Of a DNA stretch of 64,000 nt, positions 8,101-60,997 are shown piece by piece (position 1 is the first letter of the stretch; each line of letters starts with the position of its first letter). The translations under genes were made by a program, and so were the position numbers. The notes under the pieces are model-generated. The model saw only the letters and a list, made by a program, of their open reading frames with translations. It had not been told where the DNA came from and ran no database searches. This DNA comes from Ophelia neglecta (Eukaryota), in assembly GCA_965285935.1 (NCBI GenBank), contig OZ260664.1, positions 93,558,001 to 93,622,000 of the forward strand, in the 5' to 3' direction.

Positions 8101-11100
8101 CATTTAACTCTAAACAAAGGACTGAAATTAATTTTTCGATTAGACGTTAAAAAAAGATGGGTTACCTGTTTTACAATCTGGGTACTTAAATCCGTCAGTG
8201 CATTTTGAGCAGCCAGTTAAAGGGTTACATGACTCGCATTGGTCACAATCTAAAAAGAAAGAGCACCACCTAATAACGGGTGTAACTTGACAAGGCATAT
8301 TATAGCGACGAGTAATACTCGGAAGCCGATCATAAGATGCACTGTTTTTTATTTGGTCTTATCTATCTTTCTCAGGTGGTGAACTTGAACTGTAAATTTA
8401 CACTTCATCTGTCTCCAGTATATTAGGAACATAGATAAGACATAAATAAGGCAATTTAAATTAACATTAACAAGTATACAAAACCAAAACATTTAGATAA
8501 GTTTTTAGTGGCGTATTTTAAACGCAACTTTAACTAGCACACACCTCGATGCAAACACAATGTGGGAGACGGCTTCCAGGAGCTCCGAAGGTTGTTCTTA
8601 TTGGTATATATTTTTCTCCCAAGACAACGCAACCTTTTAACTTGTATTAATTCGATTTTCAAATAGTATACTTCTAGGCATGTAGCATTTTATACGTTTT
8701 GTGTTTTTTCAGTCTGATTTAAAGCCCATGGAGCCTGTTTACTAAACACGTGCTTCCAAGCTTGAATGAACCTGGATTGAAATAAGCTTCAACTTATACT
8801 TATACCTGTTTCATATAACCAAGGTCATCAAGGGATTGCGCGGTTATTGCTAAGCAATAAAAAATGGCTAGATTTGATTTTAAATGCTTTCTAATATTGC
8901 TTGGAAAAGCCATCTTAAAGTTACAAGAACTTACGTATAGCAGTAACGCTATGAGGTTTTGTCATATATGCATATTATTGTTAACAAATTGTTGAAAATC
9001 TCTAAAGCATAAATGTAGCTGGTGTGCAGATAAAGACTAGGATTGCCCTTTATGAAATCAAAATTCACACCCATAGTGCTCATTAATCGGAGAATCCGTC
9101 GGCAACCAGTGCTATATTTATGAAATGGCGCCCTGCACCCGGTCCCATAAAGCCATTTAGCTGGGTTTACCAGCGAAAGCCCGGACTAATTTGCTCGATA
9201 AGTGACGCTCTCGATTTCGTAACGGGAATCGGTGTCTAAGTATTTTGTTAACAAATTGACCAGACCAGAATTGATCTACTACTTCATTACTTCGATCTAC
9301 GAAACTATAGTACAATACAATATTAAAAGGATGTAGTGAATTCTTTATATGTGTGTTTAATAATAATCGGCCAAAAGTAGAAGTTCTGTGAGGAGTTTTG
9401 CGAAGCGCCAGTGGTACAATGGGCTGCCAGTATTACACTAAGGAGAGGCGCACGAGCTCTTCCCTTCGCCGGCAACTAGATAGCTTGTAGCTGGCATGGT
9501 AGTCTGCGCGACAGGTGATGGGGAAGAATATTTTTTACCCCTCCCTCGGAACGAAAGTAGATAGTCGGTGGTTGGCGTGGAAGTCAGCGCGGCAGCCGAT
9601 GGGGAAGGAGCACCGTCAGGCTCATCACGGCCAACTAAGTGAGGAAGCTATAATAAGCTATCATATTAGAAACTAAAAATGATACATCTTCTATATATTT
9701 GTTGCTTGGCTATAACAAAGGAAGGGTGGTTATATGTATATGCAGAAATTGAAGTTACAATGAAACAGGATTTACGGTTAAGCTGCATCTCACTTCATTC
9801 CTGGTCTGACCAAATCTAGCATGTGGCAAAACCAGGGGTATAAGCCGCCTGGTAGGGGCAATTTTTAATGACGTACAGAGAAACATACCGAATTTATCAA
9901 AATATAATATATTGCTTAAAAAAATAAGAGGTTCTCTGATAGTTCCCCCAGCGTAGAGAAGATCCAATTCATAAACGATGACTTATTTTAAAACAAATTC
10001 AGGTTCTAGTTTCATTGTTCATTGTTTCAACCATTCGTATTAATACAGTGCTTGAAATTGAAACTTTAGAGTGCTAGTTTTTACTGCTGTCATTCATATG
10101 TTGTACCTGATGCATAGATTTGAACACATTATCACACAAACTTTTATCAATACTCAAAGACATTTGATCGTATAGTCAAGTAGACGATACGAGTCCAACC
10201 AATTGTTTAATTTGCTTCAATAGAAAAGTATATACTTTGAATACGATAATTCGCTAGTGATCTCCTGCACTAAGCCCTTATTTTTTCTTGAGCATAAAAT
10301 GAGCCCTGTAGTTCTGGAGATGAGTGGATTACCATCCTTTATTTATGGCTGATATTATAAACCTGTTAAGTAATATTATTGGCAAAACAAAACAGAATGC
10401 TACAAGTTAGCGTGTGTAAATTTCGACAAATACGCCGGAATGACATTTTGCTGGTTAAATTTGGTTCAATCGTCAATGAAAATTGATTGCTTTTAAGTGA
10501 ATTAACGTTGTGATGCGTGCTATTTTCTGTTTGAAGAAACAATGCTTTACTTAATGTAATGGCGTGGTCCTCCTTTTGAAAATAAGCGTAGTATGGTCAG
10601 TTGTTAAATTTACCTATAGGTTTGTATCCATGAACCATCACCTCACACAGTCCAAGGAACTCAGGTTGTATTCCACCTGTCCTGATGATAGTTACATATC
10701 TACCAGTAACTGGTGTGTCACACATTATGGTGTCATGTCCTCCGTTGGGTACGACTCCTGTATAATCCTTACAAAGTCTTGTTTGGTCACCATCAGTAGT
10801 ATAACCCACGCCAAGACGGAAATTGCCAGTTCGTTCTATGAAAAGGACGTGTTGGTATAAGTGTAGATACCCAAAATTTGGATGGCAATTGTTTATAATT
10901 ATATCGAAATTGATAATGCCTGCGCTGAAAAGAAAGTTATTCCGTAAGCTTTGAAAAATCTATTAGTCCAGTCAATGAAAAAAAATCCATTGAGGTTGGA
11001 CAAAAATGTTAACAAAGGTTTTTCACCTGAAATAGGTTCAGTGGGGGTATGTTAGTCCACACAAAAAAAACCAACGCGAATCCACCCATGGCAAATCCTA

Positions 11101-14100
11101 ATTTTCAGCCCGAATCCAAGATGGCCGACTTTTTAATAGTAAAATGTACGAACACACTAAACTTTTTAACTTACTGTCATAGAAACACATTTAAAAGGTC
11201 ATTTCCCACTAAAATTAGGATACCGAATCACATGGTTATACTTCTGAGTCCATCAGAGGTCAGGTTAATGTAATATTGTCAAGGTCAAGGTCAAATATGA
11301 TCAAAATAAGCCAAAATCAGGAAAAATTGGCATTTATTTTAATTGATTACAATCAAGAGTACCCTACAGTCAACGCCCGCGGATAAGGGAGGGCCTCACC
11401 CTTCAACGTCCAGTTTCAGCCCTAACGTGAGCTACGTCTAGTATATGTCCTTTCATGGGATCGGCTTGTAGTTCGCTGACTTTAATTCGCTGCCTACTAT
11501 TTATCTTTATTATGTTTATAGGTTATTCACAGTTTAGATTTTGCCATCTTAATTTCCGTCTTAATATCAATACTTTTGTTTATGTTATCCGTATATTTCG
11601 CTGTCCTGCTTTTGAGAAATTTACTTACATGTCAAGCCATTTTGTCACCCTTCGTTTCACTCATGCTTCATTCTTCATTTCCACATCGCTTACATCAGCA
11701 ACTCGTGTTTGTATTATGCTTTCGTCCTACTCACACACAAGTTATCAAACTTGTGCTGTCAAGTCACCATTTGCGTCTTACGAATTTGTCTAACTATGTA
11801 CTCTCAGAAGCCCTTTTTTTTTTAAATCTGTCATGATTTGCATTGCCCAGTATAGAGCGACGATCGGTTTATTTTGCCTCAGCAAGTCTAAATTTGGGAG
11901 TGACGCCTTGTTCTGGTTCATAATATTTCCGTCCTTTCTTTTTAGCTTATTTGTGGCCCCAAACATTTTGCGTCAGTGCGGTGATGTCGTGACAAACCCC
12001 GGCCCTGCAGATAAGATTGGTATTTCCTTCTCTTACATGAATATACGTAGTATTTTAGCAGCCGCAGTTGTCAACGGCGCTCCGTGTCACGACAAATTTA
12101 CACACCTGTGCGCTTACGCCTGTCACTATAGGCACGACATTATTGCACTTGGCGAAACATGGCTAAATTCTAGTATTCTTGACTCCTCTGTTTCAATCCC
12201 TGGTTATCTACCGCCCTTCCGACGGGATCGCGAGGGTGTTGGAGGCCGTCTCGCTGTTTATCTATCTGAATCTTTTAAAGGCAAACGGATGAAAGCAGTA
12301 GAGTCTAATTTAATCACTAATGTTTGTATAAGTACCAAAATTCAAAATTCCCTGGTTTTGCTGTGCTTTTACTTTAGACCACCTTCTGAAGATTGTCTTC
12401 TTTTTCCTACTGGTATAGACGAAATCATAGACTCGGCCTCCGAAAGTCACGAAATTTTGGTCGTCAGATAGAACTAATGCTGACGGCCGTCTAATACATG
12501 CCAACGAGGTTTCTCACAAGTTATACACGAAGTAACCCGTAGTGACACTCACTCCGAGGCCTGCCTCGACCATGTATTTATCAACTCTACCGGTCCTTTG
12601 ATATCCAGCGGTAATCTACCACGTATGTTAGATAACTGTGACCATCTCCCAATTTTTGTTGAAATGTTCCATGCCGTCCGCAAACCTCGAGCATTTAAAC
12701 GGGAAATATGGGATTTCAAAAACGGCAATCACGAAATCTATCAGGATCTTTTGTTCTCGGCCCCGTGGGATTTGGTACTTTCTCTCTCTGACATCGACGA
12801 TATTACTGAAAACTTTACTATTACTTTGCTACAAATCGCAGAGCATTGCTTTCCTCACCGCGAGGTTGTTATAAGACCCTCGGATAAGCCCTGGATGAAC
12901 TCTGTTATTAGACGTGCCATGGCAAGGCGCGATCGCCTTCATAAATCCAGAAATATTAGTATTAATCATACTACCCGATACAACACTGCCCGTAACCATG
13001 TCACTGACCTTGTGCGCGAGGCTAAAGCTAATCTTGACGCCTCGACAGATGAAATAGCCAATTATAATAACATTTTATCTCCAAACTGGAGGCGACTTAT
13101 GAAGGCTATAATTAAGACTTCTTCCTCCCCCGTTCTTCCCCTGCTTTGCACCAGGGTGACAATATTATTTCTGACCCTAATCTAAAGGCCGATATTTTCA
13201 ACGATTTTTTTATAGAGCAGTCTACAATTGACGGAAGTAGTGATGAAGTTCCTAGTGAACCAATTCTAGTCTCTCCTGACAGCATCGATTCAAAAATAAT
13301 ATCAGCTCTTGAGGTATATAATGTTCTCAAAAACTTAAATACTTCTAAAGCGACTGGTGCTGATAAATTTGGCAACTATCTCCTTCGCGAGGCCGCTCTC
13401 CCTCTTTCTGAACCACTTTCATGTTTGTTTAATATATCTTTAGTCCAGTGTAAATTTCCCTCGTGCTGGAAGCAAGCAGATGTTATTCCCTTACATAAAA
13501 AAGGTGATATCCATGACTGTAATAATTACCGCCCAATTTCACTTTTGCCTTGCCTGTCTAAAGTCTTTGAACGTTTGATGTTCAATCACCTATACTCTCA
13601 CTTAAAAACCCAAAATATCCTTGTGCCTAATCAAGCGGGATTCATTCCTAATGATTCAACTATTAATCAACTTCTCGACATATGTGAGAATTTACACAGA
13701 ACATTGGATTTGGGCGATTCAATTATTGGAATCTTCATTGACTTTACAAAGGCATTCGATAAAGTATGGCACAAAGGCCTAATTTACAAGTTGAAGAGAT
13801 ACGGTATAACTAGCAGTACCCTTTCCTGGATATCTGACTATTTATGTGACTGTCGACAGCGCGTTGTTTTACCTGGCGGATCCTCGTCCTACAAATTGGT
13901 TCCTGCGGGGGTTCCCCAGGGGTATCCGTCCTGGGGCCCCTACTTTTTCTAGTATACATAAACGACATCGTCCTGGAGATATCAAATTGAGCTTACCTTT
14001 TTGCGGATGACACGTCGCTCTTTGCCAAAGTAAAACTTGACAATATTGCGCCTTCGCTTGTTCGTGTCAATGAGGATCTTGCTTATATTAATACCTGGTG

Positions 14101-17100
14101 CAACACTTGGAAGGTTTCCACCAGCACCAAAAAGACTACATACATCCTGTTTTCTCGTCACCGCCGCTCTGTTGACTATGAACTAAATCTTTTTCTTGGT
14201 TCTGACAAAATCACCAAGTCTTTTTCCCATTCCCACTTAGGTGTTTTATTAACCAGTAACTTGTCCTGGGATGAACACATCCTGCATATTGCCAAAAAAG
14301 CTTCTTCTAGGCTTAATATTATTAAATCTGTTAAATATGAAATGTCTCGCAAAGGCCGCGACATGGCTTACAAGTCATATGTTAGGCCCCTACTTGAATA
14401 CGGGTCAATACTTTTTGATAATGCTTCTGCTGAACTGCTCGATATCTTAGAAAACATAAATCTTAAAGCAGCCCGTATTGTCTGTGGTGCCCGTAAGGGC
14501 ACTTCTCATGATGCTCTTCTGCAGGAAGTGGGATGGGAATCTTTTCTTGCACGTCGTAAAGCGTCTCGCATTCTCAAGTTATTTGACATTTTTAACAACA
14601 ATACTCCTGCTCAGCTCCGGAACCACATCCCCCCACTTATTAGCCACTCCTATCCTACTAGGAGAACTTTTGAGGAATATGTGCCACTACCTTTCTTTCG
14701 CACTCAAAATTACAAACCTTTTTTCTTTCATAAAACCATCTGCGATTGGAACACGCTTTCATTGTCTACTCGTAATTTATGTCGGAAGTCCACGTTTAAA
14801 TCGTTGATACGGGAAAAATGTAAGAAGCCCCCGAAGTATTACTTTATGGGGTCACGCAAAACTCAGATTTTCCTATCCCAGTGCCGACTGTCATGCTCAT
14901 GCCTTAATTATCCCTGTGCGACGATTATGGGCTTCATCCTTGGTGCTGTCACCATGATACCCATCCATGTTAAACTTTGTTTGCCATGGATTTGCCATGG
15001 GTGGATTCGGGTGGTTTTTTTGTGTGGACTAACATACCCCCACTGAACCTTTTTCATGTGAGAAACCTTTGTTAACATTTTTGTCCAACCTAAACCATTT
15101 ACTGCTCGGACTATATCCCTGTTCTTCAGTAAGGGTGGTTTTTTAATTCAAGTAAGACCTAGGAACAATCTTAGTAGTGTTTTTGGTCCCGTGTACTGTA
15201 AGTATACATGCGTATTGCAGTAAGATAACCAATAGAACATGATATCTTAACAATGATGACGGTGTACACCAAAAAAGCAGTACCTTAAACACATTCAGTT
15301 TGCCAATAACAAAGCTGTATGTATATATATATAGCTGAGGTTTAGCCTATGCTGTTAAAAACTCATTGCAAATTAACTTTAGTTAGCAANNNNNNNNNNN
15401 NNNNNNNNNNNNNNNNNNNNNNNNNNNNNNNNNNNNNNNNNNNNNNNNNNNNNNNNNNNNNNNNNNNNNNNNNNNNNNNNNNNNNNNNNNNNNNNNNNNN
15501 NNNNNNNNNNNNNNNNNNNNNNNNNNNNNNNNNNNNNNNNNNNNNNNNNAGTATTTGTAATACTCAAGGCTGGGTTCATGGTAGACATTGTAAAGCCATT
15601 TATTATAATTCAAGAATGTTAGAACTATGTGATCAATAAATGTCACTAGTCATCTCCTTCATGTTATAATATACTAATACGTGTGCGAATTAAATGTAAA
15701 CAAATTATTAACTAACAGTCTACAATTTCAAATACAACAGCTCGATACGTCTGCTTTGGGGCAGGATGACGATCAATAAGTTTTATAGTGTATTATTCTG
15801 TTTTAATTTAACTGTCTGTAGACGACAACATTTTGATTGTTAAATGATATATATCGATTTATTTGTTTGGTTGTCCTATTTTTCAAACAGTTCAACAGAA
15901 GCAGGCAAATGCCAAACCTATGCCTTGACTGGTCGAATATAATCAGAAGTTTGAATAAAGTCCATAGGGTCAGCACAATAAGCTATACTGCAATTGACTT
16001 ACTGTGAGCATTGCCATTTCTATTGAAGATGGTGACACTGACAACTGTGTAGGCATCTTGTAGAGCGACGTACCACCAGGCTCTGTTCCCGTCCCCAGCG
16101 TCAGGATGGGCACAATACCGTTCTGCCGAGCCGATGATGCCGTCCACGGCTAGACCCGCGTGTAAACCATTATAAGTTCCTGTCTGAGAGGCCGGCTTTC
16201 CACGAGCTACATTACCTGTTAGAACAACAAGTTACGAATATGATATGATGTGCTTAATGGTGTAAGGTGTAAAGCCACTCGATCTCAAACTGACATGATT
16301 TAATCGAAAGCTGGTCAAGTTGACCTTATTTAATTCATTAGAGAGTTTTGGTAGGCGTTAGTAGATAAATAGTAGTGATTGGGTAGGGCTGAATTATCAG
16401 GGCTGGCTTGAAACGCCAACGACCATGTGTTACCTATTCTACAGCCAGTCCCAGTTCTCCGTATGCCGGCCGCCGGGGGATCATCCATCTGACACACTCC
16501 TTGGTACAAACATGCTCCTGTCTTCCTGTCACAGGCAGATGTACACAGACAAGGAAACACACACCCAGCATTGGTATCGCCAAACCTGCACAGATCTGGG
16601 GACAGATATGTAAACTAAATGAATTCATTTTGTTACGCATATTGATGGTGTCCTTTCAAAATATAACAGAAATAGCTATGTATTTTGTTTTATGATACCA
16701 AAAAAGGCCAAAACAACAACGACGTACTGCTCAAGGTAAATCTATAGCTCGGGGCGGAGATTAAGAATGTACCATACGTCAAAAAGCTTCGTAACTGATC
16801 ACCGACAGTCGGAGATCTGCCTTGCAAAAGTAGGCCCCTTGGTCAACCGTCATATTCGGAGTGTTAAAAAAAACTAGGTGTTGTCTGCATATTTGCGGGT
16901 GTTATCTCTAAAGGCACGATGATTTTGCCAGTGTGGCTATACCACGAGTCAGAACCAGACAAGGAAATGTTAGTGTATGCTAGCCCATCAGTAGCAGACA
17001 TATAGAGGTTACAAAGTAACCTGAAATTACATTTCCAAGGCTGCACAGCCTGGCCCGTCGTAGGTTTCAATAGGACGTTTGTCCCCTGGCTTTATTAAAG

Positions 17101-24741: not shown

Positions 24742-27700
24742 TCAAAACTCTTCATAAAAATCTTCGTTTTTATTCAACTCTTCGTACATCGGATCACCTG
24801 TGGCAGCCGCATTTACTGAAAAGTACAGTCACAGTTTGGTAGAATTGGAAGATTTATCCCAAATGCAACATTTATCTACATGTACACAGGATGATAAACA
24901 GCTAAGTCATATGTGAATGACAATAATAATAATAATGATAGTTTATTGCCACTTCAACACATGTATATTGAGGTTAATCGTATGCTAATAAAAGAACAAA
25001 TGGTTTAGCAAAATAATTAATGACGTGTGAGACAAATGAAGCATAATGTTTATGGGCCAATGGCGTCTATTCTTACCATAGGTGACTGGCTGAGGTAACG
25101 GTGTCTCGTACACGTGACTGTCTGTGACAGCTACTTCATGGGCTGAGGGAGGCTTATGGTCCGATTGATCATCATGTCCTGGTTCTGTCCTGGGAAGCCT
25201 TTTGGCCCTACGTCTGTAATAAAGAGACTGAATACAACGCAAATAAAGGAGAATCGTTAATCAAGACGAGTCCATTTAGTCGGTCTGAAATCAACAGGAA
25301 CCTAAGTATATTCCGTGGGTGTACATATCATATTGCTTAGGTCTTCCAATGTCCAAGTACACCTGTCCATCTCGAATGATGAAACACACATTTGCCCGTC
25401 GACCCATACTTTACGATTTCTTAAAACAGGATTCCAACGCTTTGCGCGATTAGCCTATTCACATATTACAAACCTGATAAGGACGACAATAACTATTGTA
25501 ACAAGAGCCGCTATGATTAGGAAGCCAACGACTGATCCGGCAACAGGCGCCGCAAGTCCAAACTGGCCAGATGGGGCCTTTGCTGGGTCTGGAGAAGCAA
25601 CCGGAAATATATGCATGATGATTAGTTGGTGAATAATCTGGCAAATATATTTAGGAAGAAGCATTTGGTGACTGCTGAACACTGATTTTGACGCGTAAAC
25701 GATCTATAGCAGTTTCAGTTGAATCAAAGTGAAAGTATCCTAAGAGTTTATTTTATTAATTATGATTGATTACCTAGTCCCAGATCGGCCATAGTAGTAG
25801 CTGAGACATTGTTTGCGTTCTGGGAGTATTCTGTCTTTCCACCGGGCAAGTGACGATACACGTTGACTAAAATCTGATATGTTCTGTTGGCCAAAAGCCC
25901 AGGTAACCTTTGGCTGTATTTAATATAAACAGTATCTTCACTTATAGATCTTTCATATGATGTTTTTTCTAATCTTGTATCCTCAAAAATGGTAATTCTG
26001 TAACCATATACTGCTGTACTGTTTAATGGCATGCCTTCAACATGTGACCACTCGACGGTAATACTAGCACTGGTCACATTGGTTACATAAACATGGTTGC
26101 TCTTTGGAAAGTTCTCGTAACCTGTTAAAATGTCAAGAGCAGTAGATTAGTGTCAATAATGCATATACACAGCCAATAGTGACTAATTGACAAGAAAATG
26201 TTAACAGAAAATCTAGTGACAAGGGAAAACCTACTGATAGATACGTTACAGTGCCTTCCTGCGTACCACGTGTTATACGGAATCAGTTGACAGCCATGAC
26301 TACACATTCCACTGTATCTCTCACAGATCTGCGAGTTAGGTAGTGTCTCACAGTGACCACTGCAGCTGTACTCACAAGTCTCACCGTAGTAGCCATACGG
26401 ACACAGGGTACACTGTCCACTATATCTTTCACACGTTGGGGTACCTTCATTAACAAAACACTTCATACTACATGCTTTACTACAGTCGTCAGCAAAAAAA
26501 CTGTTAACACAACCATGAATACAACTTCCATTTAATTGATTACAAGACCCAAATCCGTTTTCTGAAAGAGCTTTACAGTGGGTACTGCATCTTAGGTTGC
26601 AAAAGTCACGGTACCACCCATCCTGACAACCCGAGCATATTCCATTTTTTTTGGCACACACAGGCTTTCCATTGACACTAGCACAGTATGAACTACAAGG
26701 ACTGTCACACTTCTTGCCATATAAACCATTGTTACAATCGTTGTTACAATCTCCTGTTTCTCTCTGACATGTGTTAGAGCCTATGACAACAAGACACCCA
26801 CTGTTACAGGAGTTTTGACACTGGTCTCCGTAGAAAGGTTCCAAACATCCATTCACACATCGTCCGTTAGTGATAGAACATGACCTGGACCCCTGTACAC
26901 TAACGCAATTAGCACTACATTGCCCGCGACAATTGTCCCCGTACTGTTTGTCACCACATTCTGCAAGATAAATTATTTATAAACTTGCGTTTTTATTTAC
27001 TAAAGAGTTAACGCTGATGATCGAGCGATACCACCAAACGTTAAGTGCACCTATGCTAAGTGCAAGGGAATCCCATAGATGGTGTGACACCTGTCAAAAC
27101 ATTGGGAATTACATTTATTAAAGCCACAAGACTAGCATACAAGGATGGCTTGTGTCCACTATACTATCTTCCTGTTTTCATCGCGCATTCCTTTATATAG
27201 AGATAATTTTGCTATAAAATGAGTATAGCTTCCTTTGTGTATGTGGGCCTGTGCCTATTATTAAATGGACAATACTTGATTAGTTCTTTGTCTGCGGGTG
27301 TCCACTTCGGTTTTTAATTTAGCTGAACAGTCTGTATATAGTTGAGCTTAAGTCTCGGCGCGACTTGAATGCATACAATTTCACTAATGAAACACATTTA
27401 ACTCTTAACCAAGGATTAACATTAATTGTTCGATTAGACGTTAAAAAAGGATGAGTTACCTGTTTTACAATCTGGGTACTTATATCCCTCGATGCACCTT
27501 GAGCAGCCAGTTAAAGGGTTACATGACTGGCATTGGTGGCTGTCACAATCTGAAGAAAGAGCACCACCCAATAACGGGTGTAACGTGTCAAGAAATATTT
27601 TTCGTCCATAACAACACAACCTTTTAACTTAACCACAAAAGAGATTAACTCGATTTTCAAATAGTATACTTCTAGGGCTGTAGCATGTTTAAAGTTACGT

Positions 27701-33700: not shown

Positions 33701-34666
33701 TTATTTCCAGGGGGGTACACCAGTCTTATATCCACGGGGTGTACACCAGGCTTATTACCAGGGGGTGTACACAAGGCTTATTTCCACGGGGTGTACACTA
33801 GACTTATTACCAAGTGGTGTACACCAGTCTTATTTCCACGGGTTGTACACTAGACTTATTACCACGTGCTGTACACCAGTCTTATTTCCACGGGTTGTAC
33901 ACTAGACTTATTACCACGTGGTGTACACCAGTCTTATTTCCAGGGGGTGTACACCAGTCTCATTTCCACGGGGTGTACACCAAGCTTATTACCACGGAGT
34001 GTACACAAGGCTTATTTCAACGGGGTGTACACCAGGCTTATTACCACGGGGTGTACACCAGACTTATTTCCACGGGGTGTACACCAGGCTTAATTCCAGG
34101 GGGAGTACACTAAACTTATTACCACGGTACTAATTACCCGAGAAATATCGATCATTGCGGCATAATGTACATCACATTTTAAAAGAATATTTTCACACCA
34201 ATGGTTTTACAAATATGACCGCACCCTGAAGGGCTAGGATATGCTCCAGCAGGCAGCCCCCACGTATTGCTTACACACAGACATACACAAATGGGTTGTG
34301 TGCAGTACATTTTCCGGAAGACTACTGGACACATTGATTCAAGAAGTAAATATAAAAAAAACCTACACATATCTCACTTTTACCTGTATTAAAAAATGAC
34401 AAGGCTTATTCTGAACAGTCGAAGTAAATTACATAAAGTCCAATATGGCATGTCACGGTAGAACCATATCAATATGTACGTGTTTTTTACTAACCAGCTT
34501 GGAATATGCTACACAGACATGCAGTCACATACATCTACATAGACCATACGTTGTAAAAACATTGATATTAGATTGACGGCAACATTCACTAACCTGTCTG
34601 GCCAGTAACTATGAGAATCAAAACGCCTGTAGTTATTAACGAACTAACATAGACTTCACAAATCAT
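24742..34666 (-). CDS. Receptor paralog B: F-type lectin/EGF/FN3/TM protein with ITAM-like tail, about 720 aa, apparently intact
   Basis: Exons 34666-34594, 31369-31208, 30978-30763, 29716-29495, 27549-27460, 26960-26235, 26121-25774, 25588-25474, 25213-25077, 24815-24742. Total 2163 nt, open. Tail ends GDPMYEELNKNEDFYEEF*. Confidence 0.85.
25774..26121 (-). CDS. Paralog B exon 7: FN3 domain
   Basis: 348 nt, homologous to 6229-6576. Confidence 0.85.
26235..26960 (-). CDS. Paralog B exon 6: EGF-like repeats
   Basis: 726-nt open phase 1-1 exon; matches ORF 26125-26856. Confidence 0.9.
29495..29716 (-). CDS. Paralog B exon 4: F-type lectin C-terminal half
   Basis: 222 nt; GRYVTI..LCEVMVHG. 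Confidence 0.85.
30763..30978 (-). CDS. Paralog B exon 3: F-type lectin N-terminal half
   Basis: 216 nt; NVARGKPAFQ..AVDG..CALP..WWYVDL..FNRKNDYAH. Confidence 0.85.
31480..32450 (-). mobile_element. LINE ORF1 relic, paralog B copy (same internal deletion as A)
   Basis: Homologous to 16700-17720. Confidence 0.5.
33541..34135. repeat. 26-bp minisatellite (about 23 units), intron 1 of B
   Basis: Same consensus, partly alternating ACTAGAC/ACCAGTC variants. Confidence 0.9.
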
Positions 34667-44306: not shown

Positions 44307-45395
44307 CTATAGGTTTGTATCCATGAACCATCACCTCACACAGCCCAAGGAACCGAGGTTCTAGTCCACTTGTCCTGATGATAGTTACATATCTACCAGT
44401 AGCTGGTGTGTCACACATTATGGTGTCATGTCCTCCAACGGGTACGACTCCTGTATAATCCTTACAAAGTCTTGTTTGGTCACCATGAGTAGTGTCACCC
44501 ACGCCAAGACGAAAATTGCCGGTTCGTTCTATGGAAATGACGTGTTGGTATTTAGTGCAGATACTCAAATTTCGGAGGTCAATTGTTTTTAATTATATCG
44601 AAATTGATAATGCCTGCGATGGAAAAAGTAAGTTAATCCGTAAGCATCGAAAAACCTATCCCTGTTCTTCAATGCTGCTTTAAAAGTGGGTAAATATTAG
44701 TTAAACCGGAGGCATGTGTTTTTGTCCGCAGTTTATGATTGTTATGATTGGTATATTAAACTTTTTTATTCAAGTAAGACCTTCGTACTGAAGTAAGATA
44801 ACTAGTAGAACATGATAGCATAACAATGATGACGTTGTTATAATATACTAATGTGGGTGCGAATATAATGTAAACAAATTATTAATAAACGGTCCACAAG
44901 ATTTATACACAACAGTTCGATACCGCTGCTTTGAGGCAGGATGACGATCAATAAGTTTTGTTTTGTAACATTCTGTTGTAATTTAACTGTCTCTAGACGG
45001 CAACATTTGGATTGTTAAATGATATATATTGACTTATTTGTTTGGTTGTCCTAATCAATTTTCAATTCTCAACCGAAGCAGGCAAATGCTAAACCTATGC
45101 CTTGACTGGTCGAATATGATCAGAATTTCGAATAAAGTCCACAGGGTCAGCACAATAAGCTATAGTGTGATTGACTTACTGTGATAATGGGTAGCTTTTC
45201 GATTGAAGATGGTGACACTAACAACTGTGTAGGCATCTAGTAGATCGACGTACCACCAGGCTCTGTTCCCGACCTCAGCGTCAGGATGGGCACAAGACCA
45301 TACTGCTGAGCCGATAATGCCGTCCACGGCAAGACCCGCGTGTAAACCAGCATACGTTCCATTCTGAGAGGCCGGCTTTCCACGAGCCACATTAC
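44307..45395 (-). CDS. Paralog C F-type lectin exons 3 and 4 (45395-45180, 44528-44307), both open
   Basis: Same motifs and splice phases as paralogs A and B. Confidence 0.8.
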
Positions 45396-53032: not shown

Positions 53033-56000
53033 TATCGTCTACAAACAAACAATTGGCTAAACAACCTCATTTACGCTTTCGTAACTAGGCAAGTTGAATA
53101 CAATTATAGCCTATTATATATCATGATTGATATTACAGTGACTGCAGATGGTCATCAGATCTAGCAGATTCTCTACCCCCAATTTCGAGACATTAGTCAG
53201 TGTAACAAAAAAAAACTAGGATAAGGGAATTTAAATCTCGCTGTACTGATTTGAGCCAAACTTGCGTATGATGTTTTTTGCGCTGCTGCTGACGGTTCCT
53301 TCGGGCTGGTTTATTGTATCATTCCTGATTAATGTCTTTGAATTGTTTGCTGGACATTTGAAAAATGTATAGCTCATTATTTGATGCTTTGCTTGCTTAT
53401 TAAAATTGTAGTTGTAATTGTATTTTGTGATTATCCGTGCCTTCCGAGGACTCATTACACCTGTCGGTTATCTAGAGGAAAAGCATTTTTAATAAAGAGT
53501 GCTCTCTGAAGAAGCAGCTTGATTATAAACAAGACTATATTGTATGTTATAAGTAATACCTACATTCAATATTGAAGGAAAATTAAGTATGTCAGTTCAA
53601 GTACGTAGGTTTATTACCATCCGACAAAGAAATAAGTACAAACCAACAAATAACAATGGTATTAAGGAAATTACAAAGAAACATATTATATATAATCATA
53701 CTAGTGAAATTGACTGCAATTTGGCCGCATAAAACACAATTGTATATATTATGTTGAACGATGAAAAGGCCACATTTTTCATACTAAGTCAGCTAACTAT
53801 GTGGACACTCACGTCGGTGGGTACCAGAAATAACACTTGTGCGATTGTCAAATATACATGTGTGAAATAAAATACCTTTAAAATAACTTTTTAAGAACAA
53901 ACAATGGTAAACACAGGAATTATTAATAATAAGCTCAACATACTTGTTTGCTTAAGTATACGAGGTTGCTTTTATAATGCACTGCTGCATTTTAAGACTT
54001 AAAATTTGAAAACAACTTTATATGCGTTTGATATGTGAACATTTCCAGGCCCTAAGAATTCTCGGAAAGAAGAAATGACAATGTTATTGAACTGATTTAA
54101 ATTGTCAAGTATGTCTGCAGATAGTTAAAAGTACAGTCCAATATAGAAAAGGGTAACCAGTTTTATGTCTTGTTCCAGGCAAGGCCTGTTCACAAGTAAA
54201 AACTAATTTCACCTGGTATATATACCTGCTGAATCATTTCTCTCCTAAGTCATCTTAACTCCTCAGGGAAAATACACAGAACAGTCGCCGCAGCGCGAGA
54301 AATCTAATTCATTTGGCAACCAGGTAACCATTCGCCTCTTAGGTAGAGAGTGGTTCATTTGGTTTAAAGTCTTTGTCAGAGGTGATCGCCGGTCATTCAG
54401 TCTGGGAGCTGTGCTCGATACCAATTCGGCCACAGCGCCACAAATAATATAAAGGACCTTACGTTATCAAAATATTCTGAATTGCAAATTGTGGTGCGAT
54501 TTAAAATCAATTAAATGGCTTAGATATTTATGACCCCAGTAGAGCAATACTAACAAGCTGATGTTTATTCATGTTGCACAGGAAAAGGAAATAAAACATT
54601 TTTTTCATGTTGGAAAATGGTTACTTTAACGAAATTCCACAGGTGGCATTCATCACGTCCATTTACGTACTGCCAACTCTACTTGTTACATATCTCCGTT
54701 TGTATTCAACGCTTCGTACATCGGATCACCTATGGCAGTGGCATTTACTGAAAAGTACAATCACAGTTTGGTTGAATTAGAAGTTTTATCCCAAATGCAA
54801 CATTTATTTACATGTACGCAGGATGATATACAGTCATATTTGAATAACAATAATAATAATAATAATAGTTTATTGCCACTTCAACACATGTATATTGAGG
54901 TTAATCGTATGGAAACAAAATAAAAGATTTGCTAACAAAAGAACAAATGGTTTAGCAAAATAATTAATGACGTGTGAGACAAATGGAGTAATGAAGCATA
55001 ATGTTTATGGGCCAATGGCGTCTATTTTTACCATAGGTGACTGGCTGGGGTAACGGTGTCTCGTACACGTGACTGTCTGTGACAGCTACTTCATGGGCTG
55101 AGGGAGGCTCATGGTCCGATTGATCATCTTGTCCTGGTTCTGTCCTGGGAAGCCTTTTGGCCCTACGTCTGTAATAAAGAGACTGAATACAACGCAAACG
55201 AAGGTGAATCATTAATCAAGATGAGTCGGACTGAAATGATCAGGAACCTAAGTATATTCCGTGGGTGGACATATCATATTGCTAAGGTCTTGCAATGGCC
55301 AATTACAGCAGTCAATCTCGAATGTTGAAACACACATTTGCCCGTCGACTTATACTTTACGATTTTCTTAACAGGATTCCAACGCTTTGGTGTAAAGCGC
55401 GATTAACATATTCACTTTTACACACCTGATAAGAACGACAATAACAATTGTAACAAGAGCCGCTATGATTAGGAAGCCAACGACTGATCCGGCAACAGGA
55501 GCCGCAAGTCGAAACTGGCCAGATGGGCCCTTCGCCGGGTCTGGAGAGGCTACTGAAAACGTTTATATGATGATTAGTTGGTGAATAAACTGGCATACAT
55601 TTATAGCAGTTACAGTTGAATCAAAGTAAAAGTATCCATTGAGTTTATTTTATTGATCATGATTGATTACCTCGTCCCAGATCGGCCAATGTATTAGCTG
55701 AGACATTGTTTGCGTCCTGGGATTCTTCTGTCTTTCCACCGGGCAAGTGACGATACACGTTGACTCAAATCTGATACGTTGTGTTGGACAAAAGCCCAGG
55801 TAGCCTTTGGCTGTATTTCATAAAAACAGTATCTTCACTTATAGATCTTTCATATGATGTATTTTTTAATCTTGTATCCTCAAAAATGGTAATTCTGTAA
55901 CCATATACTGCTGTACTGTTTAATGGCATGTCTTCAACATGTGACCACTCGACGGTAATACTAGCACTGGTCACATTAGTTACATAAACATGGTTACTCT

Positions 56001-56130
56001 TTGGAAAGTCCACGTAACCTGTTAAAATATCAAAACAGTAAATAAGTGTCTATAGTGCATATACACAGACAATAGTGACTAATTGGCAAGAAAATGTGAA
56101 CAGAAACTCTAGTGACAAGGGAAAACCTAC

Positions 56131-56844
56131 TGATAGATACGTTACAGTGACTTCCTGCGTACCACGTGTCATAGGGAATCAGTTGACAGCCATGACTACA
56201 CACTCCACTGTATCTCTCACAGGTCTGTGTGTTAGGTAATGTCTCACAGTGACCACTGCAGCTGTACTCACAAGTCTCCCCGTCGTAGCCATACGAACAC
56301 AGGGTACACTGTCCACTATACCTTTCACACGTTGGAGTACCTTCATTAACAAAACACTTCGTACTACATGCTTTATTACAGTCGTCAGCAAAAAAAACGT
56401 TAATACAACCATGAATACAACTTCCATTTAATTGATTACAAGACGCAAATCCGTTTACTGGAAGAGCTTTACAATGGGTACTGCATCTTTGGTTGCAAAA
56501 ATCGTTGTACCACCCATCCTGACAACCCAAGCATATTCCATTTGTTTTGGCACACACAGGCTTTCCATTGACACTAGCACAGTATGAACTACAAGGACTT
56601 TCACACTTCTTGCCATAGAAACCATTGTTACAATCGTTGTTACAATCTCCTGTTTCTCTGCCACATGTGTTAGAGCCTGTGACAACACGACAACCACTGT
56701 TACAGGAGTTTTGACACTGTTCTCCGTAAAAAGGTTCCAAACATCCATTGACGCATCGTCCGTTAGAGATAGAACATGACCTGGACCCCAGAACGCTAAC
56801 GCAATTAGCACCACAATTGTGCCCGTACTGTTTGTCACCACATT
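56131..56844 (-). CDS. Paralog D exon 6: EGF-like repeats
   Basis: 714-nt open exon; matches ORF 56030-56740. Confidence 0.85.
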
Positions 56845-59800
56845 CTGCAAGATAAATTATTTATAAGTTTACACCATTTACAAGCTTTGTCAACTACTAC
56901 TGGTATACTGACGTATAAAATATGTTTTTATTTTCTAAAGAGTTAAAGCTGATGACCGAGCGATACCACAGGACGTTCTAGCGCACCTATGGTAAGTGCA
57001 AGGGAATCCCTTGTTGTGACACCTGTCGAAACATTGGTAATTACATTTGTTAAAGCAACAAGACTAGCATACAAGAATGGCTTGTGTACACTATACTATC
57101 TTCTTTTTTTTCATCGCGTATTCCTTAATATAAAGATAATTTTGCTATAAAATGTTTTACCACATTAGGTTAAAATCATTTTCTTACTACTATATTGAAA
57201 GTTGATATTGGTGCGGTTGACTCGTTAGCTTTGTGTTCTGAATCGCATCATGAAAAACTGTTAACTACTTCTCATTTCAACTGATATCAATGTTATTGTT
57301 CTATTGTTTTATTTTATGTTGTTAACATTAGAAGCTTGTTTACTGGTTTGGGGGGGGGGGGGTAGGGTGAGGATAGCTGCATTGGTGTATGTGGGCCTGT
57401 GCCTATTTTATAATGGACTATTCTTGATTAGTTCTTTGTCTGCTGGGTGTCCACTCCCGTTTTATTTTAGTCTGAACACCCTGTATATCGTTGAACTTAT
57501 GTCTCGGCGTGACGTGAATACGATTTCAAAAAAGTAACACATTTAACGCTAAACAAAGAACTAACATTAATTGTTTGATTAGACGTTAGAAAAAGATGGG
57601 TTACCTGTTTTACAATCTGGGTACTTAAATCCCGCAGTACACCTTGAGCAGCCAGTTAAAGGGTTACATGAATGGCATTGGTGGCTGTCACAATCTGAAA
57701 GAAAGAGCACCACCTTATAACGGGTGTAACTTGACAAGGCATATTATAGCGATGAGTACCACTCGGAAACCGATCATAAGAAGCACTGTATTTTACTTGG
57801 TCATATCTATCTTCCATAGGTCTTGAACTTAAACTGCTAATTTACACTTCATCTGTCCAAGTACATTAGGAACATGGATAAGACATTAATTAGGCACTTC
57901 AAATTAACCTCAACAAGTATACGAAACAAAAGCATTTAGATACGTTTTTAGAGGCGTCTTTAAACGCAGCATTAACTGGCACACACCTCGATGCATGCAC
58001 AATGTGGGAGACGGCTCCCCGGAGCTCCGAGGGTTGTTCTCATTGAGATATATTTTTCTTCCAAGACAACGCAACCTTTTAACTTATATTAATTCGATTT
58101 TCAAACAGTATACTTCTAGGATGTAGCATTTCAAATGTTTTGTGTTTTTTCAGTCTGATTAAAATCCCATGGAGCCTGTTTAATAATCACCTGATTCTAA
58201 GCTTGGTGGAACCTGGATTGAAATTAGCTTTAACTTAAACTTTTTCCTGTATCATATAACCACAGTCATAAGGGGATTGCGCGGTTATTGCTCAGCAATA
58301 AAAATCGGCTAAATTTGATTTCAAAAACTTTCTAATACTTGGAAAAGGCATCTTAAAGTTCCAAGAACTAACGTAGCTAGTTTGCGGATAAAGACTGGGA
58401 TTGCCCTTTATGAAATCAAAATGTACACCAATCGGATCATTAATCGGAGATTCCGCCGGCAACCAAGGCTTTATGTATGAAATGGCGCCCTGGAAAAAGC
58501 CATCAAGCTGGGCTTGCCGGCGAAATCCCGGCCTAATTTGCTCGACAAATGTGGATTTCGATTTCATAAACGGGAATCGGAGTCTATGATACAATAGTAT
58601 AATGTAACAGACAAAGTTCTCTGCATTAATTCCCACTATTTAAATTCAATATGCGTGAATACATTATATGCGTGTTTATTAAGAATCGGCCGAAAATATA
58701 AGTTCTGTGTCGAGTTTTTCGAAGCGCCAATGGTAGAATGGGCTGCCACTACTACATTTAAGAGAGGCGCGCGAGCCCTTCCTTCACCGGAAACTAGATA
58801 GCCTGTAGCTGGCTTGGTAGTCTGCGCGACAGGTGAGGGGCAAGCATATTTCTTGCATATACGTCGGTGGCTGGCGTGGAAGTCAGCGCGGCAGCCGATG
58901 GGGAGGAAGCACCGTCAGGCTCATATTGTCCATCAGTGCCAACTAAGTGAGTGAGCTATAGTGAGCTATCACATTAGAAACTCTAAATAAAACATCTTCT
59001 ATATATTTGTTGCTTGGTTATAACAACGGAAGGGCGGTTATATGTATATGCAGAAATCCTCTTTACAATGAAAGAGTAATTAAGTTTCGGCTAACATCAA
59101 TCCAGGTCTGGCCAAATATAGCATGTGGCAAAACTAGAGGTATAAGCCGTCTGGTAGGGGCAGTTTTTACTGGCGTACAGAGAAACATACTCTCCGAATT
59201 TATTAGAGTATACTAGAAGCGTTAAGAAAGGTTCTCTGATAGGTCCCCCAGCTTAGAGAAGATACACCTAATAATCGATGACTTATTTTAAAACAAATTT
59301 AGGTTCTAATTTCATTGTTCATTGTTTTTACCCATTCGTATTTATACAGTGCTAGGATGATTTGAATAATTAGAGTGTTAGTTATTACTGCGGTCATTTA
59401 TATGCTGTACGTGATGTATACATTTGAACACATAAGAACATATATCAATACTCAAAGGCGCTTGATCGTGTAGTCAAGTAGACGATATGTGGCCAACCAA
59501 TTGTTTAATTTGCTTCAATAGAAAAGTATAGACTTTGAATACGATAATTCGCTAGGGATCTCCTGCACTAAACCCTTATTTTTTCTTGAACATTAGGAAA
59601 ATGAAATGAGCCCTGTAGTTCTGGAGATGTGTGGATTACCATTCCTTTTTTGCTGGCTGATATTATAAACCGGATAAGTACTATTATTGGCAAAACAAAA
59701 TAGAATGTTGAAGGTTAATTAGCATGTGTAAATTCCGACAAACACGGCGGACTGACATATTGCAAATTTGGTTTCAATCTTCAGTGAAAGTTGATTGTTT

Positions 59801-59920: not shown

Positions 59921-60997
59921 CTATAGGTTGGTATCCATGAACCATCACCTCACACAGTCCAAGGAACTCAGGTTGTAGTCCACCTTTCCTGATAATAGTT
60001 ACATATCTACCAGTAACCTGTGAGTCACATATTATGGTGTCATGTCCTCCGTTGGGCACGGCTCGTGTATAATCCTTACAAAGGCTTGTTTGGTCACCAT
60101 CAGTAGTATAACCCATGCCAAGACGAAAGTTGCCGGTTCGTTCTATGAAAAGGACGTATTGGTATTAAGTGTAGATACCCAAAATTCGGAGGGCAATTAT
60201 TTATTATTATATCGAAATTGATAATGCCTGCGATGGAAAAAGTAAGCTATTCCGTAAGCATCGAAAAACCTATCATTGTTCTTCAATATAAAAGTGGGTA
60301 AATATTATTTAAACCGGAGACATGTGTTTTTATCCGCTGGTTATGATTGTTATGCTTGGTATATTGAACATTTTTATTCAAGTAAGAACTAGGAGCAGTC
60401 TTACTGCAGTAAGATAAAGAACATGATATCATAACAATGATTACGTTGTTGTAATAAACTAATGTGGGTGCGAATATAATCTAAACAAACGGTCCACAAG
60501 ATTTATACACAACAGCTCGATACGTCTGCTTTGGGGCAGCATGATGACTAATAAGTTTTGTTGTGTATTATTCTGTTTTAAATTAACTGTCTGTAGACGA
60601 CAACATTTGGATTGTTATATTAAATATATATCGTCGTATTTGTGTTTGGTTGTCCTAATCTATTTTCAATGTTCACAGAAGCAGGCAAATGCTAAACCTA
60701 TGCCTTGAATGGCGAATATAATCAGAACTTTGAATAAAGTCCATAGCGACAGTTCAATAATCTATACTTCGATTGACTTACTGTAAACATGAACATTTTT
60801 TCGATTGAAGATGGTGACACTGACAACTGTGTAGGCATCTTGTAGATCGACGTACCACCAGGCTCTGTTCCCGCCCCCAGCGTCAGGATGGGCACAATAC
60901 CGTTCTGCTGAGCCGATGGTGCCGTCTACGGCTAGACCCGCGTGTAAACCACCAAACGTTCCATTCTGAGAGGCCGGCTTTCCACGAGCTACATTAC
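59921..60997 (-). CDS. Paralog D F-type lectin exons 3 and 4 (60997-60782, 60142-59921), both open
   Basis: Same motifs and splice phases as paralogs A and B. Confidence 0.8.

What the first reader, a model, noticed from the sequence alone, without database searches (positions are those of the whole stretch)
10614..60997. Lectin-domain variation concentrates in the predicted sugar-binding loops
Seen (A/B/C/D): loop 1 SQTGTYNG/FQGGMYLN/SQNGTYAG/SQNGTFGG; loop 2 AERYC/AERYC/AVWSC/AERYC; loop 3 HPDAGDG/LPVAGGG/HPDAEVG/HPDAGGG; loop between the two Arg NGNAHK/KNDYAHQ/KATHYHK/KNVHVYK; last loop TGGIQPE/TGGIQPE/TSGLEPR/KGGLQPE. Framework strands (NVARGKPA, DAYTVVSVTIFNR, GRYVTI, LGLCEVMVHGY) are invariant. 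Known: these positions correspond to the CDR1-5 loops around the fucose pocket of eel agglutinin-type FTLDs. Inference: diversifying selection on ligand specificity.
Basis: partly seen in the sequence, partly recalled or inferred. Interest (0 to 1): 0.82.

Follow-up and report, generated by a model that had tools for sequence, protein, structure and literature searches.

The report
Fast-evolving loops in lectin receptor genes
Four tandemly duplicated membrane-receptor genes (a fifth lies just outside the window) carry a fucose-lectin-type head whose ligand-facing loops have changed amino acids two to three times faster than neutral DNA while the rest of the protein is conserved, a pattern already known from oyster sperm bindin and eel lectins.

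Summary
All quoted loop and framework strings are on the minus strand at the stated places. Each lectin domain is split into two phase-1 exons with canonical AG/GT sites, and the 'loop between the two Arg' spans the splice junction. The N gap lies inside the intron of copy A and its flanks are collinear with copy B.

The four copies are separate genes of about 7-11 kb. Each encodes a Cys-rich exon, an F-type lectin domain (FTLD), MEGF-type EGF repeats, an FN3, a TM and a tail with Tyr motifs and its own stop codon. A fifth close copy lies 4 kb below the window. The genome holds at least 150 related FTLD exons.

With loops defined beforehand from an AlphaFold model of a homologue, dN/dS is about 2.1-2.8 in CDR1-5 (p 0.005-0.011 against 1). 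It is about 1.0 in bottom loops, 0.3-0.4 in the core and 0.2-0.5 in most other domains. M1a/M2a rejects neutrality: p 5e-4 to 5e-5 for five copies and 1e-10 for 18 paralogues. Twelve of 14 candidate sites fall in CDR1-5.

Diversifying selection is supported. Ligand specificity is untested. This is a new member of a known kind.

The parts
60782..60997 (-). Copy D, FTLD exon 1 (strand beta2 to CDR4; CDR1-4)
   Evidence: Pfam PF22633 28.8 bits; PDB sequence hits 3CQO, 3LE0, 1K12
59921..60142 (-). Copy D, FTLD exon 2 (second Arg of the triad, beta7-beta11, CDR5)
   Evidence: hit to 3CQO E 1.1e-9
45180..45395 (-). Copy C, FTLD exon 1
44307..44528 (-). Copy C, FTLD exon 2
30763..30978 (-). Copy B, FTLD exon 1; the triad His is replaced by Leu
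29495..29716 (-). Copy B, FTLD exon 2
16003..16215 (-). Copy A, FTLD exon 1 (one codon shorter in CDR4)
10614..10835 (-). Copy A, FTLD exon 2
   Evidence: Pfam
15390..15549 (.). Assembly gap inside the intron of copy A; flanks collinear with the intron of copy B; not filled
61229..61390 (-). Copy D, Cys-rich exon just upstream of the FTLD (phase 1-1)
   Evidence: conserved in a 70%-identical distant paralogue; splice sites
57603..57698 (-). Copy D, second small Cys-rich exon block
56105..56851 (-). Copy D, block of about six MEGF/laminin-type EGF repeats
   Evidence: Atlas feature hits EGF_laminin / EGF_PEAR1L
55768..56037 (-). Copy D, fibronectin type III block
   Evidence: Pfam fn3 E 3e-5
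55371..55562 (-). Copy D, open frame holding the transmembrane helix
   Evidence: hydrophobic stretch of about 25 residues followed by basic residues; weak EphA2_TM hit in copy C
55030..55170 (-). Copy D, cytoplasmic block with a Tyr motif (YETP); nearly invariant in A-D
   Evidence: dN/dS 0.20
54686..54754 (-). Copy D, last coding block (D-P-M-Y-E-A-L motif) and stop codon
38572..45787 (-). Copy C, known extent from the Cys-rich exon to the stop; the EGF exon carries a 26-nt deletion and a 1-nt insertion (frameshifts) near 40395-40505
24742..31370 (-). Copy B, known extent from the Cys-rich exon to the stop
5191..16596 (-). Copy A, known extent from the Cys-rich exon to the stop

Best explanation
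The window holds four members (A-D) of a five-gene tandem array. Each gene encodes a type I membrane protein with these parts in order: an undetermined leader, a small Cys-rich module, one divergent F-type lectin domain, a second Cys-rich module, about six MEGF-type EGF repeats, an FN3, a TM helix, and a short tail with conserved tyrosine motifs.

After duplication, the lectin heads diverged by repeated amino-acid replacement in the loops on the ligand face of the beta-barrel. These are mainly CDR1, CDR2 and CDR4, with CDR5 showing a signal at family level. Replacement ran at a rate above the neutral rate. The barrel core, the disulfides, the Ca-site motif and the rest of the receptor stayed under purifying selection.

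What is shown: exon structure, homology to FTLDs, the distribution of variation, and dN/dS above 1 at loop sites.

What is inferred: that the selected property is glycan specificity, and that the proteins act as cell-surface recognition receptors in immunity or self/non-self recognition.
For: Homology and structure:
- Both exon halves hit solved FTLDs (3CQO, 3LE0/4GWI, 1K12) and the matching halves of Pfam PF22633.
- The model of a 39%-identical homologue has pLDDT 92.5 and superposes on 3CQO and 1K12 with TM 0.88 and 0.83.
- The four Cys of the two FTLD disulfides and the hhDGx Ca motif are kept. His-Arg-Arg is kept in A, C, D and Z.

Selection within the five copies:
- 48 sites vary in amino acid, against 17 with synonymous change only. 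M0 omega is 0.92.
- With a-priori classes, CDR1-5 has omega 2.1-2.8 (p 0.005-0.011 against 1), bottom loops about 1.0 and the core 0.31-0.39.
- M1a against M2a gives 2dlnL 15-20 on the three best topologies, with about 10% of sites at omega 6-7.
- Twenty data sets simulated under M1a gave a largest LRT of 6.8.
- The test stays significant without the possibly broken copy C (p 0.002-0.005).
- Exon 1 alone gives p 5e-5.

Selection across 18 paralogues:
- 2dlnL is 46 (p 1e-10), with 14% of sites at omega 3.6.
- Twelve of the 14 sites with posterior above 0.8 lie in CDR1-5, which cover 28% of positions (binomial p 1e-5).

Neutral yardsticks:
- dS matches intron divergence: 0.06-0.18 against 0.09-0.16 for the same pairs.
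- Loop dS (0.10) is not raised.
- Other domains of the same genes have omega 0.20-0.50.

Gene models:
- Each unit has its own TM, tail and stop codon.
Against: - There are only five close sequences. Loop partitions hold 7-9 codons each, so single-loop values are noisy. CDR2 as a whole is 0.76 and CDR3 has no synonymous changes.
- Exon 2, which holds CDR5, is not significant within the cluster.
- Top and bottom loops do not differ in the fraction of variable sites (p 0.59).
- The codon likelihood code is my own. It gives NEB rather than BEB posteriors and has had only a 20-replicate null check.
- Paralogues in tandem arrays exchange sequence. The FN3 of copy C is clearly mosaic. Recombination can inflate site-model LRTs.
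- Alignment inside CDR4 and CDR5 is uncertain where lengths differ.
- The top/bottom assignment rests on a homologue's secondary structure and strand parity, not on distances in a model of this protein.
- Copy B lacks the triad His and copy C has a frameshifted EGF exon, so not every copy need be a working fucose lectin.
Confidence: 0.68

Rival explanations
1. Relaxed constraint only. Surface loops of a beta-sandwich tolerate almost any residue, so they drift at the neutral rate (omega about 1) while the core is conserved. No selection for new specificities is involved.
For: Bottom loops, which do not face the ligand, have omega about 1.0 and vary at 9 of 19 positions, nearly as often as the top loops. 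CDR2 as a whole is 0.76. Exon 2 alone does not reject M1a.
Against: M1a already contains a neutral class and is rejected, with p 5e-4 to 5e-5 for five copies and 1e-10 for 18 copies. The a-priori CDR1-5 partition rejects omega = 1 (p 0.005-0.011). Loop dN (0.22; CDR4 0.44) exceeds both dS (0.12) and intron divergence (0.06-0.18).
Confidence: 0.15
2. The result is an artefact of sequence exchange and alignment. Short conversion tracts import whole loop segments from divergent family members. Together with misaligned indel-bearing loops, this mimics an excess of replacements on a single assumed tree.
For: The array is mosaic. The FN3 exon of copy C has dS 0.5-0.7 to the others against 0.1 elsewhere, and the Cys-rich exon has an unusually low dS of 0.04. 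The Z-D intron is the closest pair (K 0.058), yet the coding tree pairs Z with C. CDR4 and CDR5 carry indels.
Against: Tracts from paralogues 30-35% divergent would bring synonymous differences too, but loop dS (0.10) equals the domain mean. Exons 1 and 2 analysed apart prefer the same topology, and exon 1 alone gives p 5e-5. The strongest sites (11, 15, 32) lie in loops without indels.
Confidence: 0.1
3. The array is decaying. The copies are pseudogenes or are becoming so, and the loop changes are early decay rather than adaptation.
For: The EGF exon of copy C has a 26-nt deletion and a 1-nt insertion that break the frame. Four of the 18 other family members whose two FTLD exons were joined have in-frame stops. 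Copy B has lost the triad His. There is no expression evidence.
Against: All ten FTLD exons of the five copies are open with intact splice sites. The FTLD core (0.31), EGF (0.50), FN3 (0.45) and tail (0.20) are under purifying selection. Decay gives omega near 1 everywhere, not above 1 in the loops and 0.3 in the core. The signal persists without copy C.
Confidence: 0.05

Closest known systems
Oyster (Crassostrea gigas) sperm bindin F-lectin repeats
   Same: These are FTLD copies that diversified by positive selection at a handful of sites clustered round the fucose pocket. Some copies keep the His-Arg-Arg triad and others have lost it. The FTLD coding sequence is split by an intron in which recombination adds diversity (PMC5712786).
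   Different: Bindin is a secreted acrosomal protein with 1-5 tandem FTLDs inside one gene, and its diversity is largely allelic and by splicing. Here each gene has one FTLD on a transmembrane EGF/FN3 stalk, and the diversity lies between tandem paralogues. A role in fertilisation is not indicated by anything seen here.
Eel fucolectins (Anguilla anguilla agglutinin, 1K12; A. japonica eFL-1 to 7)
   Same: The fold, the basic triad, the Ca motif and the two disulfides are shared. The isoforms differ mainly in CDR1 and CDR2 (PMC5712786; alignment).
   Different: The eel isoforms strictly conserve His52 and the CDR4 sequence. Here CDR4 is the most variable loop (dN 0.44), differs in length, and lacks the Asp of RXD and the Cys-Cys pair. 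CDR1 is about 5 residues shorter and CDR2 about 2 residues shorter, while the loop after His is 2 residues longer. The eel lectins are soluble serum proteins.
Striped bass MsaFBP32 (3CQO), binary tandem FTLD
   Same: It is the best solved-structure match for both exon halves. Its C-terminal domain also lacks the vicinal Cys pair in CDR4.
   Different: In MsaFBP32 the introns lie at the bottom of the barrel (PMC5712786). Here the intron cuts CDR4 one codon before the second Arg, on the ligand face.
MEGF10 / PEAR1 / Draper / CED-1-type EGF-repeat receptors
   Same: The stalk of closely spaced Cys-rich EGF repeats resembles EGF_laminin / EGF_PEAR1L clusters in the feature search. The proteins also share a single TM and a short tail with tyrosine motifs.
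   Different: No Pfam EGF model reached threshold. No EMI domain or NPxY motif was seen. Membership was not established. This is a resemblance in architecture only.

Membership tests
F-type lectin domain (FTLD) | F-type jelly-roll fold | tested here: met
   This is indirect. Exon halves match 3CQO, 3LE0/4GWI and 1K12 by sequence. A 39%-identical homologue folds with pLDDT 92.5 and matches 3CQO at TM 0.88 and 1K12 at TM 0.83. The joined window domain itself was not folded, by rule.
F-type lectin domain (FTLD) | Fucose motif H-X24-R-X-D-X4-(R/K) as defined in PMC5712786 | tested here: not met
   His, first Arg and last Arg are present in A, C, D and Z. The His-to-Arg spacing is two residues longer than in eel agglutinin. 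The Asp two residues after the first Arg is absent in all five. The Arg-to-Arg spacing is 7 residues (6 in A). Copy B has Leu for His. This is a divergent subfamily, not the canonical motif.
F-type lectin domain (FTLD) | Cation motif h-h-D-G-x after the 3-10 helix | tested here: inconclusive
   A-V-D-G is invariant, but the last position is Ile or Thr, not the small hydrophilic residue of the motif (PMC5712786).
F-type lectin domain (FTLD) | Two structural disulfides (Cys50-Cys146 and Cys108-Cys124 of eel agglutinin) | tested here: met
   Four invariant Cys at domain positions 34, 93, 110 and 135 align with them.
F-type lectin domain (FTLD) | Vicinal Cys82-Cys83 in CDR4 that packs on the fucose ring | tested here: not met
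   No Cys occurs in CDR4 of any of the 18 paralogues. The same loss is known in one domain of tandem FTLs (PMC5712786).
F-type lectin domain (FTLD) | Binds L-fucose or fucosylated glycans | not testable with these tools
   This needs recombinant protein and glycan arrays.
Lectin repertoire under diversifying selection (bindin-like) | A site class with dN/dS above 1, located on the ligand face | tested here: met
   Twelve of 14 candidate sites lie in CDR1-5. The ligand-face assignment of CDR3, CDR5 and the beta8-beta9 turn is by topology only.
MEGF10 / Draper / CED-1 receptor family | EMI domain, MEGF-type EGF repeats, and NPxY or YxxL signalling motifs in the tail | tested here: inconclusive
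   EGF-like repeats were found only by a language-model feature search (score 0.90), and Pfam was silent. A Y-E-A-L / Y-E-E-L motif and a Y-E-T-P motif are present. No EMI domain and no NPxY were seen. The gene is not filed as a member.

The most novel reading that the evidence does not exclude
The five genes are one corner of a very large germline-encoded repertoire. It comprises at least 150 and perhaps over 400 FTLD exons, mostly in two blocks of the genome. The products would be lectin-headed signalling receptors whose primary binding loop (CDR4) as well as the peripheral loops are being diversified. The animal would then carry hundreds of surface receptors with different glycan (not only fucose) specificities. 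Functionally this would be a lectin-based counterpart of the expanded TLR, FREP or NLR repertoires used for immune or allorecognition in invertebrates.
Probability: 0.3. Interest if true: 0.7.

Novelty: new member of a known kind. Interest (0 to 1): 0.5.

Why it matters
The array is a compact natural experiment. Five receptors have nearly identical scaffolds, and a dozen loop positions carry almost all of the adaptive change. That makes the rules linking FTLD loop sequence to glycan specificity directly testable by swapping loops between A, B, D and Z on glycan arrays.

The array differs from the textbook eel and bass lectins in three ways. The primary-site loop is itself variable. The intron cuts that loop. 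The domain sits on a transmembrane stalk with conserved tyrosine motifs. These differences point to a signalling receptor rather than a soluble agglutinin.

The phenomenon itself is already described. Positive selection round the F-lectin pocket, and the expansion of FTLDs in some invertebrate lineages, are both in the literature (PMC5712786).

Tried and rejected
Splicing and expression remain unconfirmed.
2. Joined domain. Exons were searched apart by reference. The joined CDS was built only inside scripts from window.fa, for alignment, codon analysis and a local BLAST against proteins already fetched. The fold was taken from a homologue instead.
3. Published residue ranges of CDR1-5. The bass-lectin structure paper (PMC2935320) is not held, and no held paper names CDR3 or CDR5 residues. 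Those two loops were assigned by topology.
4. Leader exon. A candidate ATG at 62710 was rejected because indels break its frame in the other copies.
5. Global MAFFT alignment of introns that differ by insertions gave absurd distances (A and some B pairs). Only the four cleanly aligned pairs were used.
6. The first bootstrap run timed out. A smaller one gave 20 replicates.
7. The word search with the EGF ORF found a single 33%-identical protein, and its contig was uninformative about function or organism.
8. A single giant multi-FTLD gene was considered and rejected, because each unit has its own TM, tail and stop codon.
9. The organism was not identified.
Full report
**Where and what.** The window is G000:C7:93558001-93622000. 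It has 38% G+C and one N run at 15390-15549. Self-comparison shows a tandem unit of about 14.7 kb repeated four times at 80-92% DNA identity.

Each lectin domain is coded by two exons.
- Exon 1: A 16003-16215, B 30763-30978, C 45180-45395, D 60782-60997.
- Exon 2: A 10614-10835, B 29495-29716, C 44307-44528, D 59921-60142.

All exons have AG acceptors and GTAAGT or GTAAAT donors, and all are in phase 1. Its last codon is split by the intron, which therefore cuts the loop one residue before the second Arg.

**The gap.** The N run lies in the intron of copy A. That intron is 5.2 kb long, against 0.5-1.0 kb in the other copies, because it carries a retroelement fragment with a reverse-transcriptase ORF at 13146-13952 on the plus strand. 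The two flanks of the gap align collinearly with the intron of copy B, which has 142 bases where A has 160 N. The gap touches no coding frame. It was not filled.

**Rule on spliced models.** The joined domain was never sent to any database or fold tool. Exons were searched one at a time by reference. The joined coding sequence was assembled only inside scripts, from window.fa and the fetched loci.

**What the domain is.**
- Exon 1 matches the first half and exon 2 the second half of Pfam PF22633/PF00754.
- Both exons match solved F-type lectin domains. Exon 1 hits 3CQO at E 7.5e-7, 4GWI/3LE0 at E 1e-6 and 1K12 at E 3e-5. Exon 2 hits 3CQO at E 1.1e-9.
- A search of 1.8 billion representative proteins with exon 1 found 1136 relatives. 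Most are multi-FTLD proteins, and none is more than 39% identical over the whole domain.
- The AlphaFold model of the closest complete homologue (P0120:144-295, 40-row alignment) has pLDDT 92.5. It superposes on 3CQO (TM 0.88) and 1K12 (TM 0.83).

Measured against the features listed in PMC5712786:
- The four Cys of the two structural disulfides are invariant.
- A-V-D-G of the cation motif is invariant.
- The His-Arg-Arg triad is present in A, C, D and Z.
- The Asp of R-X-D and the vicinal Cys pair of CDR4 are absent in every copy.
- The spacing differs from the canonical motif.
- Copy B has Leu in place of the His.

The domain is therefore a divergent FTLD subfamily.

**The genes.** Comparing unit D with a paralogue only about 70% identical (C7:89.57 Mb) picks out the conserved exons. 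In order they are:
- a Cys-rich exon
- the two FTLD exons
- a second small Cys-rich exon
- a block of about six EGF-like repeats that resemble EGF_laminin / EGF_PEAR1L clusters in the Atlas search
- an FN3 (Pfam E 3e-5)
- an exon with a TM helix
- two tail exons with Y-E-T-P and D-P-M-Y-E-(A/E)-L motifs

Each unit ends in its own stop codon, so these are four separate genes and not one multi-lectin gene. The first exon was not found. A fifth close copy, Z, has its FTLD 4 kb below the window. Genome-wide, 150 exon-1 matches were scored out of 443 candidates. Most lie on C7 at 87-93.6 Mb and on C16.

**Distribution of variation.** Among Z, A, B, C and D, 48 of 145 positions vary in amino acid and 17 carry synonymous change only. 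I defined structural classes beforehand from the homologue's DSSP string and strand parity.
- Top loops: CDR1 11-18, CDR2 26-33, CDR3 37-45, CDR4 66-72, the beta8-beta9 turn 100-104, and CDR5 124-132.
- Bottom loops: 51-55, 83-92 and 111-114.
- Everything else is core.

CDR1, CDR2 and CDR4 are anchored to eel-agglutinin residues named in the literature (Leu23, Glu26, His27; Phe45, Tyr46; Arg79 to Arg86) through the alignments. CDR3 and CDR5 rest on order and topology only. Variable positions number 26 of 46 in top loops, 9 of 19 in bottom loops and 13 of 80 in the core. Top against the rest gives p 1e-4, and top against bottom gives p 0.59. It omits the variable block at 83-114.

**Selection within the five copies.**

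| Partition | NG86 omega | ML omega | Test against 1 |
|---|---|---|---|
| A-priori CDR1-5 | 2.1 | 2.6-2.8 | p 0.005-0.011 |
| Bottom loops | 1.0 | 0.84-1.10 | not significant |
| Core | 0.31 | 0.37-0.39 | p 0.007-0.010 |
| Whole domain | 0.78 | 0.92 | not tested |

Single-loop NG86 values are CDR1 2.6, CDR4 3.4 and CDR5 2.1. CDR2 is 0.76. CDR3 has no synonymous change.

As a neutral yardstick, dS (0.09-0.16) agrees with intron divergence for the four pairs whose introns align cleanly (0.06-0.18). Loop dS is not raised.

Most other domains of the same genes have omega between 0.20 and 0.50: EGF 0.50, FN3 0.45, second Cys exon 0.33, TM 0.43 and the first tail block 0.20. Two short blocks exceed 1. 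The 54-codon Cys-rich exon upstream of the FTLD has dS 0.04 and omega 1.75. The 21-codon last coding block has omega 1.26.

**Site models.** I wrote a GY94/F3x4 likelihood for M0, M1a and M2a.
- On the three best of the 15 topologies, M2a beats M1a by 2dlnL 15.0-19.7 (p 5e-4 to 5e-5). About 10% of sites have omega 5.7-7.0. Sites 15, 32, 68 and 102 have posterior above 0.9.
- Twenty data sets simulated under the fitted M1a gave LRTs from 0 to 6.8.
- By exon, exon 1 gives 2dlnL 19.9 (sites 11, 15, 32, 68, 70). Exon 2 gives 1.6 and is not significant. Both exons prefer the same topology.
- Without copy C the test still gives p 0.002-0.005.

**Family-level replicate.** I assembled 13 further intact FTLDs from other clusters. 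Four other paralogues had in-frame stops. For the 18 sequences, on an IQ-TREE topology in which the window cluster is monophyletic at 100% support, M2a beats M1a by 2dlnL 46 (p 1e-10). In that fit 14% of sites have omega 3.6. Sites with posterior above 0.8 are:
- 11, 15, 16 (CDR1)
- 26, 28, 32, 33 (CDR2)
- 41 (CDR3)
- 70, 72 (CDR4)
- 102 (beta8-beta9 turn)
- 109 (strand beta9)
- 127, 130 (CDR5)

Twelve of the 14 lie in loops that cover 28% of the domain (binomial p 1e-5). Indels in the family are confined to CDR4 and CDR5. The triad His is Leu in three further paralogues and Asn in one. The second Arg is Ile in another.

**Reading.** The best explanation is diversifying selection on the ligand face of a divergent FTLD carried by a membrane receptor. 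Purifying selection acts on the scaffold and the rest of the protein. That the selected trait is glycan specificity, and that the receptors serve immune or self/non-self recognition, is inference from what FTLDs do elsewhere (PMC5712786).

Three rivals remain possible but are each contradicted by specific results given in their entries:
- relaxed constraint alone
- import of loop segments by conversion, plus alignment error
- decay of a dying array

**Caveats.**
- The sample is small.
- The likelihood code is home-made and uses NEB posteriors.
- Recombination among tandem paralogues is possible. The FN3 of copy C is clearly mosaic, with dS 0.5-0.7.
- There is no 3-D model of the actual domain.

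**Comparison with the known.** Positive selection at about eight sites round the fucose pocket of oyster bindin F-lectin repeats is described. So are triad loss in some bindin repeats, recombination in the intron that splits the repeat, CDR1/CDR2 variability among eel isoforms, and large FTLD expansions in molluscs, hemichordates and cephalochordates (PMC5712786).

What differs here:
- There is one FTLD per gene, on an EGF/FN3/TM stalk with conserved tyrosine motifs.
- The diversity lies between tandem paralogues.
- CDR4, which is strictly conserved in eels, is the most variable loop and is cut by the intron.
- The scale of the family is very large.

I file the finding as a new member of a known kind. 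Interest is 0.5.

An earlier first-stage note of this scan (s1-733624) had already described the same stretch as a tandem cluster of F-type-lectin/EGF/FN3 receptors with at least five copies. My gene models agree with it.

Noticed in passing
window 10963-15139 (RT ORF at 13146-13952, plus strand): The FTLD intron of copy A is about 4.2 kb longer than in the other copies. It carries a retroelement fragment antisense to the gene (Pfam RVT_1, E 6.5e-20). The assembly gap lies just beyond this insertion's upper edge, in the same intron.
   Followed up: partly
window 40363-40505 (copy C, EGF exon): Relative to copy D there is a 26-nt deletion and a 1-nt insertion in a T run, so the frame breaks twice and several Cys are lost. 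Copy C is either a pseudogene or encodes a truncated, possibly secreted, head. Its FTLD exons are intact.
   Followed up: partly
window 39757-40023 (copy C, FN3 exon): This exon has dS 0.5-0.7 to the other four copies, while neighbouring exons have about 0.12. This looks like a mosaic origin by exchange with a more distant paralogue.
   Followed up: no
window 5-213, 20135-20262, 33545-34127: A 26-bp minisatellite (5 to 22 copies) recurs downstream of each gene, near the unit boundaries. It could have served as a substrate for unequal crossing-over.
   Followed up: no
L033, window-equivalent 69862-71855 (outside the window): A further gene upstream of copy D has the same EGF, FN3 and tail exons. 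No close FTLD exon was among the scored genome hits there.
   Followed up: no
window 61229-61390 and equivalents (Cys-rich exon upstream of the FTLD): dS is unusually low (0.04) and dN/dS is 1.75 over 54 codons. This could be recent homogenisation or a second fast-evolving module. The counts are too small to tell.
   Followed up: no
window 55030-55170 and 54692-54754, and equivalents in A-C: The cytoplasmic blocks are nearly invariant in A-D (dN/dS 0.20 in the first block). They carry Y-E-T-P and D-P-M-Y-E-(A/E)-L, which are possible phosphotyrosine docking sites. Copy Z showed no match to these two exons in the 20 kb fetched below the window.
   Followed up: no
G000 contigs C7 (87.2-93.6 Mb), C16 (0-0.94 Mb), C5, C2: At least 150 FTLD exon-1 matches were scored out of 443 candidates. 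They are arranged in dense tandem blocks. Four of the 18 sampled paralogues whose two FTLD exons could be joined carry in-frame stops.
   Followed up: partly
intron between FTLD exons 1 and 2 in all copies: The intron interrupts CDR4 on the ligand face. In the bass lectin gene the introns lie at the bottom of the barrel. The position would allow exon 1 (CDR1-4) and exon 2 (CDR5) to be reshuffled by intronic recombination.
   Followed up: no
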